Origin: Phallusia mammillata
Lineage: Eukaryota
NCBI GenBank assembly: GCA_965637545.1
Contig: OZ281501.1
Location: 15,562,001 to 15,626,000 of the forward strand
Direction of reading: 5' to 3'
Length of the DNA: 64,000 bases
This document shows, piece by piece, positions 10,741 through 18,395 of this stretch. Under the pieces are notes generated by a model. The model did not search any database. It saw only the letters and a list, made by a program, of their open reading frames with translations, and was not told where the DNA came from. The position numbers were made by a program, and so were the translations under genes. How positions within the stretch are numbered: the stretch's first letter is position 1; each line of letters opens with the position of its first letter.

Positions 10741-11913
10741 GTTGCTTGTTTGCTGTAGAGAATAAAATTTGTAAATTTCAAAGAGTTGTGTTAGAATTTA
10801 AGGCCAATGCACATTGTTTGGGTGAATATGGCATGTTGTTATTAATATTTTGACATGACTCTGATTTGCTAGAACATTGTGTTTGGGCTTGTTGCTTTTG
10901 CTAGAACATTGTGTTTGGGGCAAGCTTGTGTGAGAGAAAACTCTGCAAGACATTTTATAGAGCGCCCCTGGCATTATGACGTTCATATCAATAAATATTA
11001 CTTTCAAAATACAAGTATGTTAATAACTGAAAAATATTTTTTTTCTCAAAAGTTTGTGCGCTGAAAAGGTGTAAAAGCGTAGAATAGTGTGCCAAATTTC
11101 AACATCTTATCTTTTTTTAGTTCTATAGCAATAGCGATTGTTGGCCAGTTTCACTCTGGTATTTTCTGTGATACCCCAAAGCACATGAAAGCATATAAGC
11201 CAAAAGATGTCACATTTGCAACATGATTTCAAAAGCAGTTTCCTTTGACCTCAACCTGATTGCCTACTTGAGTTTAGCGAAGAGTTTGGGAAAATGAAAA
11301 GTGTAGGGGCTTGTTAATAAGATTGTGTCTTTCTTGTTCAGAAAAATGACATTGGGCTCAACAATGTCATTCAAAGAAACCATATAAAAAACTGTTTGCA
11401 AGAAATAGCACAGCATTTTGCTGCACCCAACTGAAAATGTCAAAAATGCAATCAGTAGAAGTTTGACATGGTTTCGTGAATCGTAAATGCAAAAAAAGAA
11501 TCAGATGAAGAAGAAATGGCTACAACGACTACCCCTGCATAAAAAGTTTAGCATCAGGTGTTACAAACCACACAACCTCAACAAAGTAGTTCAAGCTCAA
11601 TTGCATCAATTTTTAGATGTTTCTGGTGAACTCAATCATCTATTGCTCTTGGAGGAAGATGTGCTGATGCCCTCCAGGATATCTACACCCGAGTGCGATG
11701 AAGACAAGTGAAACACTTTGCAGATGTGTTTTGTTCCAGATCGACATAGGAGTCTTTACCTTGACTTCAGCTGAGAAAAGTTGCTCCCCCTAAAGATAAT
11801 TTTTTTTTTTAGGTTTTATTACTTGATGCTGACAAACCTGAGATATTTTGTGTGTAATCCGTGTCTATCAAATTTACCTCTGTTTTAAATAAATTTCGGT
11901 TTTGGGTGTATTG

Positions 11914-12416
11914 CAGTGGTTCCCAACCTTTTTGTTGTCATGGACCCCTTTTTATAATTTTTATGGGTCCACGGACCCCCAACACAATTTAGTCTTGTTA
12001 TGTTTTTTGTTTCCTGCATTATGCGTTATCATACTTTCGCTTATCATGGCAGGATTTGATCAACCTTCGCAGTCCCTCAATCTCAATAAAGTTCTGTACT
12101 GTAGCAGTCAGTGCAAAGAAGAGATACATTTTCTGGTGTACAATACTTGAAACACAGCACAACAAGTTCTATTGTTAATGTGTGTTGTGATGTCACAATG
12201 GAGGTAACAATTACGTTGGAGGTAACAATTAAGTTTTCCTGATCCAAGAGTTTGATAAACAGTTTGCACTCAGATGCAGGATTGTAAAAACGGTTTGGGA
12301 ACTTAAAAATATTGTACTGTTGTTAATGCTACTACAATTGTTTGCCTCCACGGACCCCCTGAAACCATCTCACGGACCCCTTGGGGGGTCCGCGAACCCC
12401 AGGTTGGGAACCACTG
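11914..12416. mobile_element. hAT-type MITE
   Basis: TIR CAGTGGTTCCCAACC / GGTTGGGAACCACTG; TSD GTGTATTG / GTGTATTA. Confidence 0.9.
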
Positions 12417-12630
12417 GTGTATTATTTAATATATGTAGCGGTCGATTGTATGAACTAAAGGTGTATTTTAACAATTTTTTACAGCCAGTTAAATCTTTTT
12501 TTCAGGAATCACTCCAAAATTGTTGCACCGAACCGAATGGGCAAGGCATGTTTTTATGGCATGTTACTCCCCACAAACTGCAGGGTCATAAGATGGATAC
12601 ACTAGCCCATGTGGCCCATGTCTTGTCATC

Positions 12631-12682
12631 AGCTGGAGTAAAGAGATCTTATAGGTCAAAACAGTGTGTACTATCTGCAGCT
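12631..12682 (+). ncRNA. Degenerate type I hammerhead ribozyme (core mutated)
   Basis: AGCTGGA GTAAAGA GATCT-TAT-AGGTC AAAA CAGTGTGTACTA TC TGCAGCT; aligns to the consensus but the CUGAUGA core is destroyed. Confidence 0.65.
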
Positions 12683-12866
12683 TATCATCTATTGGCCTAA
12701 AGCTTTCATATTGGTACAAGGACACTGGGCCTACATCACTTTGATTCCCAAACAGTTGCTTGAGCATTGTGAACCAGTGGTTTATGTTGTATGGAACAGA
12801 TTATTGGTGAGGCATTGGTTTTCGGCCAGTTACTCCCAACAAACTGGAGGGCAATGTCTTGTTATC

Positions 12867-12917
12867 AGCTATACTGATGAGCCTTATAGGTAAAATCAAT
12901 ATGAACTGTCTGCAGCT
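12867..12917 (+). ncRNA. Degenerate type I hammerhead ribozyme
   Basis: AGCTATA CTGATGA GCCT-TAT-AGGT AAAA TCAATATGAACTG TC TGCAGCT. Keeps CUGAUGA and GUC; G12 lost; 236 nt from the previous copy. Confidence 0.7.
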
Positions 12918-12969
12918 TCTGTTTTTAAAATTCTAATTGCAAGACTTAGTAAATTATTTGGCTTTATAG

Positions 12970-13463
12970 CAGTGGTTCTCAACCTAGGGTTTGTGGACCC
13001 CCAAGGGATCCGTGAGATGGTTTTAGAGGGTCCATGGAGGCAAACATTCTAAATACCATTACCCAACAGTACAATATTTTGTAAGTTTCAAAACCGTTTT
13101 TACAATCCTGCATACAAGTGCTAACTGTTTATCAAACCTTTGAATTAAGAAAACTTGCTTTTTGTGTGATTGTTACCTCCATTGTGATATCACAACACAC
13201 ATGAACAACAGAACTTATAGTGCCTAAATGTTTCAAGTAGTGTACACCAGAAAATTTATTTCTTTGTTGCATTGACTGGTACAGTACAGAACTTTATTGA
13301 GATTAAGGACTGTGAAGGTTGATTAAAATTCTGCCCCCAAAAGTGAAAGTATAATAACGTATAATGCAGGAAACAAATAACACGACTAAATGACTTTGGG
13401 GGTCCTCGGACCTATAAAATATAAAAAAGGGCTCTGTGACTACAAAAAGGTTGGGAACCATGG
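12970..13463. mobile_element. hAT-type MITE, same family as 11914-12416, opposite orientation
   Basis: CAGTGGTTCTCAACC ... GGTTGGGAACCATGG; TSD CTTTATAG on both sides; interior is the reverse complement of 11914-12416. Confidence 0.85.
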
Positions 13464-15258
13464 CTTTATAGGCTACTTTGTATCCAGATATGATTTTTTC
13501 ATAGTAGTGTTCTCTTAGCTATAACATTATTATTAACATGCTAACCTAAAAAGTATGTTTAAGTGGCTTACATATTTTGTAATTTGTTGAAAAAGCACAT
13601 TGTGCAGAAAGTACAGATACTTGACAGATTCATTTTGATTTATTTTTCAGATCCTCTCCTAATTTTTGGATTTCTTGGTAGACCTTTTGGAACATTTGAG
13701 AAAATAACTGTTTGGCAAATGTAAACAACAAAGCATGAATGAATCAATCCACAACATATTGAAATAAATTATTTAATTCATCATCATCAACTTCTAGAAT
13801 ATCAAGTGTTGTATTGCGGAAACTTTGACAATGAGGATCATGGTAAAACTTTTGCAATACACTAACAAAATCTTGCTTTAACTTTATAGAGCTCTGGCTT
13901 GTTGCCTGGCCAAAAACTTTCAAGTATTTGAGCAACACACTTTGTAAGTAGCAGAAATTATGATGAAGGATAAGAAAGACTGTTGCTCTATTAAAGGAAT
14001 CAACTGGCCATGTGGTTGCATGGTGGAAAACTTGCTAACAATTTTACTTCCATTTGTAAACTTATTTTTTGCCTTAAATAAAACATAACCTCCTAAATAT
14101 GAATATTTAGACTTGAAAGAAAGATTTATGCTCTTTACCTGTTTTGTTTTATGAAACAGTCTCAATGTTCATCTGATCAGATACAAGAATCTTTCTTTTA
14201 TTCTATTGTCTGTGGGAGATTGCTTAACTAACAAAAGTGTTTCAGCTCCTAAATATATGTTTAACTATATGTTGCTTGAGTTTATGGTGGTGGTCATGAT
14301 GTCTGGCAATAGTTGTGACACCTTGAATTCTTTAAAATAACATTTTTGCTTCACAGCACACTTTTGCATATTATACTCTTTAATGAGAAAGGTCTGATCT
14401 TGAAACTTGGTGTAATGACTCCTGTGTTATATGGAAAATCTATCCATTGTCAATTAAAATGAGTTACTTGAGGTAAGAATAAGGTCTATGTTCAAGCGTG
14501 ACTTATCGTCTCTCCTAAGTTCCTGATTGGGGTCAAGGTTGTTAATAATTGGTACATAAAAAAATTATTTGGGAACGTGCAACCAGTTTAGGAAAGTTCC
14601 ATTTCACCAGACTTTAATTTAATCTGCAATGTACTTGATGCACCCTTTAATATTAGGGTAAATGCTAAAATCACAGGCTGAAAAGATTCTTAAACGTGCG
14701 ACTTTGTCTCTCACAAACGACTAAATAGATGTCGATATAATCTTGTAGATGTGCCATCTGTTTTGTTCGGCTTGATAACGCCATTATTTAGCCCCCTAAA
14801 ATGGGTAAAAATAAAAGAACAGTTTGTTCATTGTCCCATTTAAAGGTTTCGTTTGTTGTGTTTCACCATAGTATACTAACATGGTAGTCCAGCTCCTCTT
14901 TTCCTCTCGGTTCTTTTATTATCCTGCGCATTTCGGTTACGCATGACTAACACTGCACGTCGCCTGAAGTTTTGTATGAGGTACGTGGTAAACAGCTAGT
15001 TTTTAAAAGCCGCTGGCGACAAATCCGTGTCTGTTTTGAAGTTTTTTAGTTATTGGGTTTATTGTTTAATGCATGTAGAGCTATTAAAACGATTTTAGCT
15101 TTCAATTGTATGAACTCTTTGAAGTGTATTTTTAAAAACTTATAGACAGGCATCTTCTTGTAGAAATTGCTTTAAAATTGAGGCAATGAACCGAATTGGC
15201 GAGTCAAGGTTTTTCAGCATGTTACTACACTAGCCAACATGGCCTGTGTCTTGTCATC

Positions 15259-15306
15259 AGGTGCACTGATGAGACCTTGTCAAAACAATGAGCAGTATTT
15301 GCAGCT
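15259..15306 (+). ncRNA. Degenerate type I hammerhead ribozyme
   Basis: AGGTGCA CTGATGA GAC-CTT-GTC AAAA CAATGAGCAGTA TT TGCAGCT; G12>A. Confidence 0.7.
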
Positions 15307-16450
15307 TACTTATCATCTATCTATTGGCTTATTAATCATATTGCCATCACTTTGGTTCCCCAGCAGTTGCTTAATTAGGCATTAAAAATCAGTTGTTTTC
15401 TGTGGTTTATACCCATTTGTGGTATTGAACAGATTTTGGTGAGGCAACATCACCTTCCAAATACTCTAAACTCTATGTTACTTATCACAGCATTTAACTG
15501 TTTTATTGTTTATGATGTCTAGCAATTGTTTTTGTACCTTGAATTTTTTTCAAATAAACTTTTTGCTTCACAGCACTCTTTTGCTTAGTTTCTCATCTAA
15601 TCAGTTCTTTTATGAAAAATCTGCCGCTTGTTGACAGTTTGAAATGAGTAACTTTGGAAAAAATATGGTCTTCGTTTAAGCTTGACTTTTCGTCTGTTCG
15701 AATCGAGTTCCTGGTCGGGTTCAAAGTTGTTAAATATCAGTTGATTAAAAATGCAGTCAGTTTGGCAAAGTTCAATTTTCACCAGACTTTAACTTAATCA
15801 GTAACAAGCTTTATGCACCCTTGAATATGTTAGGTAAAACCACGCTAAAATCACTTCAACGCGTTTAAAGAAGGACTAAAAGGCAAAAAAACTCAGTAAA
15901 TTCTCCCCAACAGCACAATTCCAACCAAACGTAATAATATTACAAATGGTAGATGCATAAAACCGACCACGCACGCTCAGTTTTGTCATTTTCCTGCTCT
16001 GAAAGCACCCAACTCAATGCAAGCATCCGACAAGCGTGCAGAGTTAATCAAGCGTGACGGTAACAATAGCTGGACTAGTCCAGCTCCTCTTTTCCTCTCG
16101 TTTCTTTTATTATCCTGCGCATTTCGGTTACGCATGAATAACACTGCACGTCGCCTGAAGTTTTGTATGAGGTACATGGTAAACAGCTAGTTTTGAAAAG
16201 CCGCTGGCGACAAATCTGTGTCTGTTTTAAAGTTTTTTAGTTATTGGGTTTATTGTTTAATGTATGTAGAGCTATTAAAACGTTTTTAGCTTTCAATTGT
16301 ATGAACTCTTTAAAGTATATTTTTAAAAACTTATAGACAGGCATCTTTTTTGTAAGAATTGCTTTAAAATTGCGGCAATGAACCGAATTGGCGAGGCAAG
16401 GTTTTTCAGCATGTTACTACACTAGCCAACATGTCCTATGTCTTATCATC

Positions 16451-16502
16451 ATGTGCGCTGATGAGACCTTACAAGTCAAAACAGTGAGCAGTATTTGCAG
16501 CT
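16451..16502 (+). ncRNA. Degenerate type I hammerhead ribozyme
   Basis: ATGTGCG CTGATGA GACCTTACAAGTC AAAA CAGTGAGCAGTA TT TGCAGCT; G12>A. Confidence 0.7.
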
Positions 16503-16720
16503 TACTTATCATCTATCTATTGGCTTATTAATCATATTGTCATCACTTTGGTTCCCCAGCAGTTGCTTAGGCATTAAAAATCAGTTTTTTTTCTGTGGTT
16601 TATACCCATTTGTGGTATTGAACAGATTTGGTGAGGAATTAATGTTCTGCCTGTTACTTCCAACAAACTGGAGGGCCATCAGATGGCTACACTAACCAAT
16701 ATGGCATATGTCTTTTAATC

Positions 16721-16778
16721 AGCTGTACTGATGAGACCTTATAGGTCGAAACAGTGTGCACTGTTTACTTCTACAGCT
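16721..16778 (+). ncRNA. Type I hammerhead ribozyme with intact catalytic core
   Basis: AGCTGTA (stem I) CTGATGA, GACCT-TAT-AGGTC (stem II), GAAA, ACAGT-GTGC-ACTGT (stem III), GUU triplet, then TACTTCTACAGCT (stem I with a 6-nt insertion). The core lies 270 nt from the previous copy. Confidence 0.85.
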
Positions 16779-18055
16779 TCTGTTTTCAAAATCCTATAAT
16801 TAGTAAATCACTTGGCTTTATACTGCACTCGGATACGATTTTCATAGTAGCCTACTGTTAGCTATAACATTATTATTAAAAAGCTAACATAAAGTAGTTT
16901 CATATTTTGTAATTTGAAAAAAGAAGCACATTTGTGCAGAAAGTACAGGCACTTTTGACAGTCATTTTGATTTATTTTTCAGAGCTCCTCTTTTAGACCT
17001 TTGGAACATTTTAGAAAAGAGCTTTTTGGCAAACGTGAACGACAAGACATGAATAAATAAATCCACGAATATTAAAACCTATTGGGTACTTTCTCTTTAT
17101 CCATATCAACTTTCAGAATATCACATGTCCTATTTTGGAAACTTTCATAATGAGGATCATAGAAAACTTTTGCAATACACAAAAAAAGTCTAGCTTGTTG
17201 GTTGGCTAAAAAACTTTCTCTCATTTCAGGTACACACTTTGAGAAAGTTGAAGTAACTCTAATGAAGGATAAGTGAGACTTCCAGGCCCTTGCTCCATAA
17301 AAGAAACCAGCTGGCCCTGCGATTGCATGGTGGACAACTTGCTAACAATTTTACTTACTTTTGCAAAATTGTTTTTTGCCTTGAACAAAACATCACCTTC
17401 CAAATACTTTAAACTCCATGTTACTTATCACAGTATTTGACTGTTTTTCTGCACCACTTTATTAGTTGTTTATGATGTCTAGAAATTGTTTTTGTACCTT
17501 GATTTTTTTTCAAATAAACTTTTTGCTTCACATCACTCTTTTGCATGGTTTCTCATCTAATCAGTTCTTTTAGGAAAAATCTACCTCTTGTTGACAGTTT
17601 AAAATGAGTAACTTTGGAAAAAATATGGTCTTCGTTTAAGCTTGACTTTCCGTCTGTCCGGATCGAGTTCCTGGTCGGGGTCAAAGTCGTTAAACATCAG
17701 TTTATTAAAAATGCAGTCAGTTTGGAAAAGTTCCATTTTCACCAGACTTTAGTTTGATCCGTAACAAGCTTTATGCACCCTTGAATATGTTAGGTAAAAC
17801 CACGCTAAAATCACTTCAACGCGGTTAAAGAAGGACTAAAAGGCAAAAAAACTCAGTAAATTCCCTCCAACAGCATAATTCCAACCAAACGTAGTAATAT
17901 TACACATGGTAGATGCATACAACCGACCACACACGCACAGTTTTGTCATTTTCCTGCTCTTAAGGCACCCAACTCAATGCAAGCATCCGACAAGCGTGCA
18001 GAGTTAATCAAGCGTGACGGTAACAATAGCTGGACTACCATGTTAGTATACTATG

Positions 18056-18310
18056 GTTTCACCCTGTAGCCCCGATATTTATCCCACTATCCCCCTAAAA
18101 GGGGTGAAATTTTAAAGAATGTCCCATTTGGATGAAATTTAGACAGGTCGTCATTGTCCCATTTTGAGGTTCGGTTTGATGTGTTACACCCTGTAGCCCC
18201 AATATTTATCCCACTATAGTCCCCTCAAATGGGTGAAATTTTAAACGATGTCTGATTTTAATGAAATTTGGACAGGTTGTTCATTGTCCCATTTTTAGGT
18301 TTCGTTTGTT
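18056..18310. repeat. ~127-bp tandem repeat; its left part (14790-14866) is separated by the P-like insertion
   Basis: CACCCTGTAGCCCC..ATTTATCCCACTAT at 18060 and 18187; TTCATTGTCCCATTT..GGTTTCGTTTGTTGTGTT at 14827 and 18281. Confidence 0.8.
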
Positions 18311-18395
18311 GTGTTTTACTCGACGTTTTAGTAAAATGACGTTTTGAGAGTTTGTAAATTATGCTTTTTTAAAATGGCAGTGTTTCACACTATGT

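What the first reader, a model, noticed from the sequence alone, without database searches (positions are those of the whole stretch)
11855..18055. A P-like DNA transposon carrying a ribozyme retroelement as cargo
The HHR repeats occupy the same position in all three adjacent element copies (old diverged copy, unit 1, unit 2): near one TIR, downstream of and antisense to the transposase relic. Capture therefore predates their divergence, and the retrozyme was spread by cut-and-paste transposition (inference). An RNA-mobile self-cleaving repeat riding in a class II element is unusual. It could be simple hitch-hiking, or could process antisense transcripts that regulate the element.
Basis: partly seen in the sequence, partly recalled or inferred. 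Interest (0 to 1): 0.85.

Follow-up and report, generated by a model that had tools for sequence, protein, structure and literature searches.

The report
P-type transposon carrying dead hammerhead repeats
A young family of cut-and-paste jumping genes in this sea-squirt genome has copied a short block of self-cutting-RNA (hammerhead) repeats to dozens of places, but the ribozymes in the block look broken, so it is most likely passive baggage and not a working device.

Summary
Window 14867-18055 is bounded by perfect 28-bp inverted ends and a 7-bp target duplication (GTTTCAC). It is a head-to-tail pair of two members of one transposon family. An older copy without ends lies at 11855-14700. All three carry hammerhead (HHR) repeat units at the same internal place.

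Genome-wide the end sequence occurs 138 times (reversed control 0). All 28 complete copies I read carry the HHR block, so it is not a local insertion followed by duplication. The "P-like" call is supported. TSDs are 7 bp (GTNNNAC), as in the P-superfamily members 1360 and Galileo. A relative (L039) with the identical end has a decayed P-type transposase.

The "transposase relic" is really a decayed second gene of about 290 aa. It resembles only the C-terminal domain of P transposase and lies convergent to the transposase.

The cargo comes from an abundant type-I hammerhead retroelement (825 near-intact cores). Its layout fits Penelope-type retrotransposition.

None of the HHR units in about 36 element copies keeps both an intact core and its helices. 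The best reading is therefore a nested fragment acquired once and then spread passively.

Earlier notes of this scan record other hammerhead-bearing transposons in this genome.

Interest is moderate. The two-gene P lineage is the more novel by-product.

The parts
11855..14700 (+). Old, diverged copy of the same element family. It has no TIRs: the 5' end is truncated near canonical position 155 and the 3' end fades near position 1755.
   Evidence: blastn against the canonical element L009:301-2296 gives collinear matches at 63-80% identity; direct-repeat families D3, D5, D9, D11-D13, D16, D18.
11915..12418 (+). Unrelated MITE (termini CAGTGGTTC...GAACCACTG) inserted into the old copy.
   Evidence: Inverted-repeat pairs I1-I6. 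The two MITE copies are 82% identical over 506 alignment columns.
12436..12968 (+). Hammerhead-repeat block of the old copy: two units, period 266 bp, both ribozyme cores mutated (cores at 12620-12684 and 12856-12918).
   Evidence: First unit has GTAAAGAG in place of CTGATGAG, and CAAAAC. Second has TAAAATC in place of CGAAAC.
12970..13463 (-). Second copy of the same MITE, in the opposite orientation to the first.
13681..14603 (-). Decayed ORF2 (P-transposase C-terminal-domain-like gene) of the old copy, in three matched pieces: 13681-13947, 13977-14141, 14274-14603.
   Evidence: Six-frame search with the intact 286-aa ORF2 of L039: E 1.9e-19, 1.4e-10 and 3.7e-17.
14860..14866 (.). Left copy of the 7-bp target-site duplication GTTTCAC.
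14867..14894 (+). 5' terminal inverted repeat (CATAGTATACTAACATGGTAGTCCAGCT).
   Evidence: The 27-nt pattern gives 138 genomic matches at up to 3 mismatches; the reversed control gives 0.
14867..16077 (+). Unit 1: a member of the 1.74-kb subfamily with a further internal deletion (canonical positions 1-578 joined to 1330-1978). It carries one dead HHR unit (core at 15248-15278) and the N-terminal part of the ORF2 relic on the minus strand.
16068..16085 (.). End-to-end junction of unit 1 and unit 2 (GCTGGAC-TA-GTCCAGC). About 18-20 nt are missing from each inner TIR, with a 2-nt microhomology. It is unique in the genome.
16076..18055 (+). Unit 2: a member of the young 2.0-kb subfamily, 99.7% identical to the canonical copy.
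16350..16815 (+). Hammerhead-repeat cargo block of unit 2, about 1.65 tandem units of a roughly 270-bp repeat. Unit A core is at 16458-16504 (G12 changed to A). Unit B core is at 16720-16764 (CUGAUGA and GAAA intact, but a 7-nt insertion TTACTTC lies between helix III and the helix I strand).
17164..17718 (-). Decayed ORF2 relic of unit 2, with 10 stop codons.
   Evidence: E 3.2e-29, 46% identity to residues 14-216 of the intact L039 ORF2.
18028..18055 (-). 3' terminal inverted repeat.
18056..18062 (.). Right copy of the 7-bp target-site duplication GTTTCAC.

Best explanation
Window 14867-18055 is a composite of two members of a non-autonomous DNA transposon family of the P superfamily. Beside it lies an older dead copy.

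A family member has four parts: two 28-bp inverted ends with their subterminal regions; a decayed copy of an accessory gene (ORF2, resembling the C-terminal domain of P transposase) near the 3' end; and, where the autonomous relative carries its P-type transposase gene, 1 to 1.65 tandem units of the genome's abundant type-I hammerhead retroelement, in the same sense as that transposase.

Shown: the block is present in all copies examined, at one position, with shared lesions. It was therefore acquired once, in an ancestor of the subfamilies, and then carried to about 70 loci by cut-and-paste transposition that duplicates 7 bp of a GTNNNAC target.

Inferred: a transposase supplied in trans moves the family. 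The block entered either by a Penelope-type retro-insertion into an ancestral element followed by internal deletion, or as filler DNA during gap repair. It is now passive baggage, because its ribozymes are mutated.
For: - TIR family: 73 forward and 65 reverse hits, control 0. Pairs lie mostly 1.7 or 2.0 kb apart.
- Exact 7-bp TSDs in 23 of 28 complete copies, with T at position 2 and A at position 6 in 23 of 23.
- The young 2.0-kb subfamily is 96.8-99.9% identical to unit 2.
- The HHR block is present in 28 of 28 complete copies, including the diverged subfamilies at 69-87% identity.
- Longer copies are explained by nested LTR retroelements: Gypsy-type domains in L001 and BEL/Pao-type domains in L003 and L004.
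- L039 has the exact 30-nt family end, 68.6% identity to canonical positions 936-1996, an intact 286-aa ORF2, and upstream on the other strand a decayed P-type transposase: PF21787 at 34 bits (cut-off 24.6) and PF21788 at 18 bits.
- The window relic matches ORF2 at E 3e-29.
- ORF2 family and the P transposase C-terminal domain: 9 of 14 members hit PF12596, best E 1e-5. The family profile hits chain 6p5a_B at E 5e-4. The Foldseek top hit of 350,542 chains is 6p5a_B, probability 0.92.
- The donor family is separate and much larger: 825 hits to the intact 44-nt ribozyme, control 0; 1738 candidate places; solo 5'-truncated copies with intact cores.
- No HHR unit in the element copies I read passes core plus helix checks.
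- P-superfamily TSDs of 7 bp (1360, Galileo) and 8 bp (P) are reported in PMC3698922.
Against: - No complete autonomous copy with both ends was recovered. L039 lacks its left end, so I could not show that the master element lacks the HHR block.
- ORF2's similarity to the P C-terminal domain is weak for any single sequence: E 0.037 in Pfam, and hhalign probability 6.6% against one local P-like transposase.
- No THAP domain was found.
- Unit B of the young subfamily keeps both conserved core stretches and could retain weak activity. This was not tested.
- Contigs of runs that are probably RNA cover the element, so some copies may be transcribed.
- Only about 36 of the roughly 70 copies were read.
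Confidence: 0.8

Rival explanations
1. The hammerhead block is functional cargo. Read-through transcripts from the element's 5' end are cut by unit B, or by units acting in pairs. This would process or limit transcripts antisense to ORF2, or release a roughly 270-nt RNA that could circularise, so each new insertion seeds a new retrozyme source locus.
For: - Unit B of the 2.0-kb subfamily keeps CUGAUGA, helix II, GAAA and helix III, and its minimum-free-energy fold is a three-way junction.
- The block has the same sense as the transposase of the autonomous relative, so it lies behind the element's presumed 5' promoter.
- Contigs from runs that are probably RNA cover the element, and two of those runs show a + strand GT..AG joint at 17084->17229.
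Against: - Unit A carries G12 changed to A in every subfamily.
- Unit B has 7 extra nucleotides between helix III and the helix I strand, so the cleavage-site junction is not that of a hammerhead.
- The 1.74-kb subfamily and unit 1 have lost unit B altogether yet still transposed.
- Several copies carry further core mutations.
- Release of a monomer needs two active sites.
- The RNA status of the runs is a guess, and contigs cannot show ends.
Confidence: 0.07
2. The hammerhead unit is native to this transposon lineage (for instance an old subterminal repeat). On this reading the dispersed genomic copies are fragments or MITE-like, fold-back DNA derivatives of it, not a captured retroelement.
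For: Among the first 100 exact ribozyme hits, about 20 lie in (-,+) inverted pairs 54-384 bp apart, which looks like a fold-back DNA element. Earlier scan notes describe fold-back relics with hammerheads in this genome.
Against: - The dispersed family is more than ten times larger and has intact ribozymes, whereas the element's units are degraded.
- Solo copies show variable 5' truncation with a roughly common 3' end.
- The inner spacing of the inverted pairs varies, and direct tandems of 269-282 bp occur. These are the published hallmarks of Penelope-type insertion (PMC8557442).
- None of the solo copies read carries any other part of the TIR element.
- A GIY-YIG open frame lies 1.4 kb upstream of an exact ribozyme on the same strand.
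Confidence: 0.06
3. A purely local event: one retrozyme insertion into one element copy, followed by tandem duplication in this window.
For: Three adjacent copies in one 6-kb stretch.
Against: The block is present genome-wide in all complete copies on all eight large contigs (C1-C8), each with its own TSD. Units 1 and 2 belong to different subfamilies.
Confidence: 0.01

Closest known systems
P superfamily DNA transposons (Drosophila P element, 1360/Hoppel, Galileo; THAP9)
   Same: - Terminal inverted repeats of about 30 bp.
- A 7-bp TSD, as in 1360 and Galileo (PMC3698922), with a palindromic target motif.
- A relative with identical ends carries TNP-like RNase H and GTP-binding-insertion domain remnants.
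- The ORF2 relic resembles the P transposase C-terminal domain.
- The inner junction lacks about 18 nt per end, close to the 17-nt staggered cut of P transposase (PMC7776569). This is an inference from a single event.
   Different: - The TSD is 7 bp, not the 8 bp of P itself.
- No THAP match was found.
- The C-terminal-domain-like module is a separate gene convergent to the transposase, not the tail of one polypeptide.
- This family is non-autonomous.
BuT5, a MITE mobilised by a divergent P element in the Drosophila repleta group (PMC3698922)
   Same: A non-autonomous element that shares only its ends with a P-type master and has internal sequence unrelated to the transposase gene.
   Different: BuT5 is about 1 kb, non-coding and has 3-bp TIRs. 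The family here is 1.7-2.0 kb, keeps a decayed accessory gene, and its foreign internal segment can be identified as hammerhead retroelement units.
Metazoan non-LTR retrozymes and Penelope-like-element hammerheads (PMC7229834; PMC8557442; bioRxiv 10.64898/2026.07.22.740005)
   Same: The donor repeat has a type-I hammerhead (open helix I, closed helices II and III), a unit of about 270-282 nt, direct tandems, 5'-truncated solo copies and tail-out inverted pairs.
   Different: The cargo here is a fragment with dead ribozymes embedded in a class II element and moved as DNA. Circular RNA and mobilisation by a Penelope-like element were not tested.
Bacterial IStrons (a group I intron fused to an IS605-type insertion sequence); from my own knowledge, not tested here
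   Same: A ribozyme travelling inside a DNA transposon.
   Different: In IStrons the ribozyme is active and removes the element from host transcripts. Here the ribozymes look inactive and no such role is indicated.

Membership tests
P superfamily of DNA transposons | Terminal inverted repeats bounding the element | tested here: met
   Perfect 28-bp TIRs in the window and in 28 complete copies.
P superfamily of DNA transposons | Target-site duplication of 7-8 bp | tested here: met
   Exact 7-bp TSD in 23 of 28 copies and one mismatch in 2 more; motif GTNNNAC. 7 bp is reported for 1360 and Galileo, 8 bp for P (PMC3698922).
P superfamily of DNA transposons | P-type transposase: RNase H fold split by a GTP-binding insertion domain | tested here: inconclusive
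   Absent from the 2-kb family itself. It is present, decayed, in L039, which has the identical 30-nt end: PF21787 at 34 bits (cut-off 24.6) and PF21788 at 18.3 bits, below its cut-off. No complete master copy was recovered.
P superfamily of DNA transposons | [quoted passage not shown] | tested here: not met
   No THAP hit in any relic piece or in the L039 pieces scanned. The N-terminal part of the L039 transposase is missing, so absence from the lineage is not shown. Foreign contig L053 has the P-type HTH domain, PF12017 at 23.9 bits.
P superfamily of DNA transposons | C-terminal domain homologous to the P transposase CTD | tested here: met
   It is present as a separate gene. 9 of 14 ORF2 family members hit PF12596, best E 1e-5. 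The family profile matches 6p5a_B at E 5e-4. The Foldseek top hit is 6p5a_B, probability 0.92, E 0.18. Single-sequence evidence is weak.
P superfamily of DNA transposons | 17-nt staggered donor cleavage and GTP dependence | not testable with these tools
   Only a hint: the unique inner junction lacks about 18-20 nt of each TIR, compared with the 17-nt stagger described in PMC7776569.
Type I hammerhead ribozyme (Rfam RF00163) | Conserved core CUGAUGA ... GAAA plus an NUH cleavage site | tested here: inconclusive
   Window unit B (16720-16764) keeps CUGAUGA and GAAA. The other four window units have core mutations. Intact cores occur in solo genomic copies.
Type I hammerhead ribozyme (Rfam RF00163) | Three helices meeting at the core, helix I open, with the cleavage site directly joining helices III and I | tested here: not met
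   In window unit B, 7 extra nucleotides separate helix III from the helix I strand. The feature is met in solo copy L030, which aligns over the whole Rfam type-I model.
Type I hammerhead ribozyme (Rfam RF00163) | Score at or above the Rfam gathering threshold | tested here: not met
   No window hit at gathering score. The best is Hammerhead_3 at 26.7 against 48.5 bits. Even the intact solo copy scores 22.8 against 34 bits, so the threshold is too strict for this family.
Metazoan non-LTR retrozyme | Tandem repeats of about 170-400 nt, each with a type-I hammerhead | tested here: met
   This applies to the donor family: exact ribozymes spaced 269-282 bp in direct arrays, for example C3:1385512, 1385794 and 1386076. 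The cargo block is 1-1.65 such units.
Metazoan non-LTR retrozyme | Self-cleaved, circularised RNA; mobilisation by Penelope-like elements | not tested
   Indirect only: 5'-truncated solo copies, tail-out inverted pairs, and a GIY-YIG frame 1.4 kb upstream of an exact ribozyme on the same strand.

The most novel reading that the evidence does not exclude
The family descends from an undescribed two-gene branch of the P superfamily. In this branch the transposase C-terminal domain is made as a separate protein of about 290 aa, from a gene convergent to the catalytic transposase. The layout is seen at about 10 places in this genome and in two foreign contigs. In the non-autonomous derivative the hammerhead repeats replaced the catalytic gene in sense orientation behind the element's 5' end. 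Each cut-and-paste insertion may therefore create a new transcription unit for ribozyme repeats, making a DNA transposon a vector that seeds retrozyme source loci.
Probability: 0.15. Interest if true: 0.6.

Novelty: new variant of a known kind. Interest (0 to 1): 0.4.

Why it matters
This is a clean case of one mobile element class being spread by another. A fragment of an RNA-mobile, ribozyme-bearing repeat was fixed once inside a DNA transposon and then copied to dozens of loci without reverse transcription.

For annotation, hammerhead motifs in this genome cannot be read as independent retrozyme insertions or as gene-regulatory ribozymes without first checking for the surrounding TIR element.

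The by-product may matter more. The family leads to a P-type lineage whose C-terminal domain is a separate, convergently encoded protein. If that lineage is active, it offers a natural split system for asking what the P transposase C-terminal domain does.

The inner junction of the dimer also gives a testable hint that these elements share the long staggered cut of P transposase.

Tried and rejected
- Rfam at gathering threshold on the whole window: nothing. Rfam on seven loci at E<=0.1: nothing. The models are too strict for this hammerhead family.
- Fixed-spacing core pattern with 14 N: no hit, because the spacing was wrong.
- Pfam on ten short relic ORFs from the window: no P or THAP hit.
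- tblastn of five local P-like transposases (L021-L027) against the element: nothing significant. None of those loci has the family TIR, so they are other P families and not the master.
- The long TIR-bounded copies L001, L003 and L004 looked like candidate autonomous elements. Their large ORFs are nested LTR retroelements. I only described them and built no consensus.
- L038: its P-like fragment lies 5 kb from a truncated family copy and is not demonstrably linked to it.
- hhalign of the ORF2 profile against one local P-like transposase: only the YIAGY-type motif aligned, probability 6.6%.
- Foldseek found no PDB match at E<=0.001. The top-ranked hit, 6p5a_B, counts only as concordant support.
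- Search for the dimer junction elsewhere: unique, so the 17-nt-stagger idea rests on one event.
- Read laying: only assembled contigs were available and RNA status was a guess. There is no information on strand, ends or cleavage.
I did not try to obtain those letters by another route.
- Literature searches found no paper describing a hammerhead carried by a TIR transposon and none describing a two-gene P element. This is absence in the searched library only.

Full report
**1. What is in the window**

Positions 14867-14894 and 18028-18055 are perfect 28-bp inverted repeats (CATAGTATACTAACATGGTAGTCCAGCT). The 7-bp direct repeat GTTTCAC flanks them.

The 3189 bp between the ends are two family members joined head to tail.
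- Unit 1 (14867-16077) equals canonical positions 1-578 plus 1330-1978.
- Unit 2 (16076-18055) is 99.7% identical to the canonical 1996-bp copy, L009:301-2296.
- At the junction (GCTGGAC-TA-GTCCAGC, 16068-16085) each inner end lacks about 18-20 nt. This junction occurs once in the genome.

The composite was inserted into a roughly 130-bp satellite-like repeat, which is seen on both sides.

Upstream, 11855-14700 is an older copy. It is collinear with the canonical element at 63-80% identity. It lacks both ends and is interrupted by two unrelated MITEs at 11915-12418 and 12970-13463.

All three copies carry hammerhead-like units on the + strand at the homologous position. Cores lie at 12620-12684, 12856-12918, 15248-15278, 16458-16504 and 16720-16764, with a period of 266-270 bp.

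**2. The family genome-wide**

The window is C8:15562001-15626000 of a 240-Mb assembly. Earlier scan notes call the organism a sea squirt; I did not verify this.

The 27-nt end pattern occurs 73 times forward and 65 times in reverse at up to 3 mismatches. The reversed control gives 0. Most hits form pairs about 1.7 or 2.0 kb apart.

I read 20 pairs (L001-L020) and 14 more loci (L038-L051).
- Of 28 complete copies, 23 have exact 7-bp TSDs and 2 more have one mismatch. Position 2 is T and position 6 is A in 23 of 23, giving the motif GTNNNAC.
- The 2.0-kb subfamily is 96.8-99.9% identical to unit 2, so it was active recently. The 1.74-kb subfamily is about 86-94% identical, and a third subfamily 69-87%.
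- Longer copies contain nested LTR retroelements, with Gypsy-type and BEL/Pao-type polyprotein domains. I only described these.

**3.

Every complete copy (28 of 28) carries the hammerhead block, and so do 7 of 8 truncated ones.

Units at the same position share lesions across subfamilies and with the old window copy:
- Unit A has GTCAAAAC in place of GTCGAAAC, plus a damaged helix III.
- Unit B has TACAGC and the 3' flank CTTCTGTTTT.

The number of units (1, 1.65, or a fused A/B unit) differs by subfamily through deletion. The block was therefore acquired once, before the subfamilies split, and then spread as DNA. 'Local insertion plus tandem duplication' is refuted.

**4. Superfamily**

The window's short minus-strand ORFs hit nothing in Pfam. 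Five P-like transposases elsewhere in the genome show no similarity to the element and have no family ends.

The link came from L039 (C6:22708300-22718299).
- Its right end is identical to the family end over 30 nt.
- 1.1 kb inside that end is 68.6% identical to canonical positions 936-1996.
- That stretch holds an intact 286-aa ORF on the minus strand (ORF2, L039:8421-9281).
- Upstream on the plus strand lie decayed pieces of a P-type transposase in the correct order: PF21787 at 34 bits (cut-off 24.6), PF21788 at 18.3 bits, and further pieces whose wording I recognise as P/THAP9-like.

A 7-bp TSD is documented for the P-superfamily members 1360 and Galileo (PMC3698922). 'P-like' is supported.

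**5. What the 'relic' really is**

ORF2 matches window 17164-17718 on the minus strand at E 3.2e-29 (46% identity, 10 stops). It also matches three pieces of the old copy. So the relic is real, but it is a decayed ORF2 and not a catalytic transposase.

- Among 1.84 billion representative proteins, ORF2 has 34 relatives. The near-full-length ones are stand-alone proteins of about 277-331 aa, the rest are shorter, and none has the length of a whole transposase.
- 9 of 14 aligned members hit Pfam Tnp_P_element_C, best E 1e-5.
- The family profile matches the C-terminal chain of the Drosophila P transposase structure (6p5a_B) at E 5e-4. The alignment includes IEYLGGYvlkKA against EYIAGYVIKK.
- An AlphaFold model (pLDDT 76) has 6p5a_B as its top Foldseek hit (probability 0.92, E 0.18). 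Each line is weak on its own, but they agree.

In this genome, ORF2-like frames lie convergent to TNP-like RNase H fragments 1.3-2.2 kb away at about eight places, and 4-7 kb away at two more. Two foreign contigs show the same layout (L053, L054).

In L039 the transposase reading frames end about 180 bp from the ORF2 stop. That leaves no room for a C-terminal domain in the transposase gene.

I infer a two-gene P lineage with a split-off C-terminal domain. I found no description of one in the searched literature.

**6. The cargo and its donor**

The intact 44-nt ribozyme (CUGAUGAG, helix II, GAAAC, helix III, GUC, helix I) has 825 genomic matches at up to 3 mismatches, against 0 for the control. 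A 171-nt unit query had 1738 first-look candidates.

- Solo copies (L028-L035) carry none of the TIR element. They start at variable points and end shortly after the cleavage site.
- One of them aligns over the whole Rfam type-I hammerhead model with every core position (22.8 bits, below the gathering score of 34).
- Among the first 100 exact hits, about 20 form (-,+) pairs with their 3' ends outward, spaced 54-384 bp, against one (+,-) pair. Four direct arrays have 269-282-bp spacing.

Frequent 5' truncation, partial tandems and an adjacent inverted 5'-truncated copy are the published insertion signature of Penelope-like elements, whose pseudo-LTRs typically hold hammerheads (PMC8557442). Animal retrozymes have been proposed to be non-autonomous partners of these elements (PMC7229834; bioRxiv 10.64898/2026.07.22.740005). 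A GIY-YIG frame lies 1.4 kb upstream of an exact ribozyme on the same strand.

The donor is therefore best read as a retrozyme-like, Penelope-type non-autonomous retroelement. This is an inference.

**7. State of the ribozymes in the cargo**

In about 36 element copies, no unit has CUGAUGA, GAAA and the GUC/helix I junction together.
- Unit A always has G12 changed to A.
- Unit B of the young subfamily keeps both core stretches, helix II and helix III. But 7 nucleotides (TTACTTC) separate helix III from the helix I strand, so the predicted three-way junction is not a hammerhead junction.
- The 1.74-kb subfamily and unit 1 lack unit B and still transposed.

**8. Expression**

The only runs on offer were assembled contigs whose RNA status is a guess. 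Their contigs cover most of unit 2 at low depth and not the flanks. Two of these runs show a + strand GT..AG joint at 17084->17229, which is absent from the large, probably DNA, run.

This hints at low-level sense transcription of some family copies. It says nothing about cleavage.

**9. Mechanism**

Shown:
- single acquisition of the block;
- spread by TIR transposition with 7-bp TSDs;
- P-type relatives;
- dead ribozymes.

Inferred:
- mobilisation in trans by a P-type transposase, possibly together with ORF2;
- entry of the block by retro-insertion followed by internal deletion, or as repair filler;
- no present function.

The inner junction of the dimer fits joining of two ends whose duplex starts 17-18 nt inside the TIR, with TA microhomology. 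A P-type 17-nt staggered cut (PMC7776569) would leave such ends. This rests on one event.

**10. Verdict**

The finding is real and its core interpretation is right: a class II element spread a ribozyme repeat. It is best classed as a nested fragment carried passively by a non-autonomous P-superfamily element, a new variant of a known kind.

Earlier notes of this scan already record other hammerhead-bearing transposons and a dispersed type-I hammerhead family in this genome. I used them only as leads.

Noticed in passing
window 16068-16085: The end-to-end junction of two different subfamily members lacks about 18-20 nt of each TIR and shows a 2-nt TA microhomology. It is unique in the genome. 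This is what joining of P-type cleaved ends (17-nt stagger) after loss of the overhangs would leave. The composite has its own intact outer ends and TSD.
   Followed up: partly
L039:6094-9643; also C82:5665-8046, C8:11515101-11517663, C5:14678397-14680552, C3:14983610-14985826, C8:9313111-9315662; foreign contigs L053 and L054: A recurring two-gene layout: a P-type transposase convergent with a stand-alone protein of about 290 aa that resembles the P transposase C-terminal domain. It is found in this genome and in two contigs from other public samples. This may be an undescribed branch of the P superfamily.
   Followed up: partly
window 11915-12418 and 12970-13463: Two copies (82% identical) of an unrelated ~500-bp MITE with CAGTGGTTC... 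termini. They are inserted in opposite orientations on either side of the hammerhead block of the old copy, forming a 1.5-kb inverted-repeat structure around it.
   Followed up: no
window 14770-14866 and 18058-18320: A roughly 130-bp satellite-like repeat flanks the composite element on both sides. The element was inserted into this array.
   Followed up: no
genome-wide, e.g. C3:4162293/4162410, C3:4236766/4236883, C3:4553228/4553345, C3:5090020/5090137: Exact hammerhead cores often occur as tail-out inverted pairs. Four pairs on C3 have identical 117-bp spacing, which suggests either an amplified small fold-back subfamily or segmental duplication.
   Followed up: no
C1:4272406-4272513 (-) and C1:4270993-4271036 (-): A GIY-YIG endonuclease frame (314-aa open frame) lies 1.4 kb upstream of an exact hammerhead on the same strand. 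It is a candidate Penelope-like master of the hammerhead repeat family.
   Followed up: no
C5:25.15-27.17 Mb: A cluster of at least seven TIR variants (CATAGTATACTCACATGG...), all on the + strand. Several are followed about 200-300 bp later by decayed ORF2 matches. This looks like a locally amplified block containing a relative of the family.
   Followed up: no
window 17085-17228 (+): Contigs of two runs that are probably RNA skip 144 nt with GT..AG ends and a polypyrimidine tract. This suggests a spliced + strand transcript antisense to the ORF2 relic. The large, probably DNA, run does not show it.
   Followed up: partly
L001:1312-3870, L003:2100-7976, L004:1867-7665: Family copies serve as landing sites for LTR retroelements: one Gypsy-type insertion and two BEL/Pao-type insertions with long open frames of 852-1958 aa. 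I described them only.
   Followed up: partly
run X17 (organism B): A run labelled as a second organism holds 37% of the sampled words of unit 2, so near-identical copies of the family may exist in another species.
   Followed up: no
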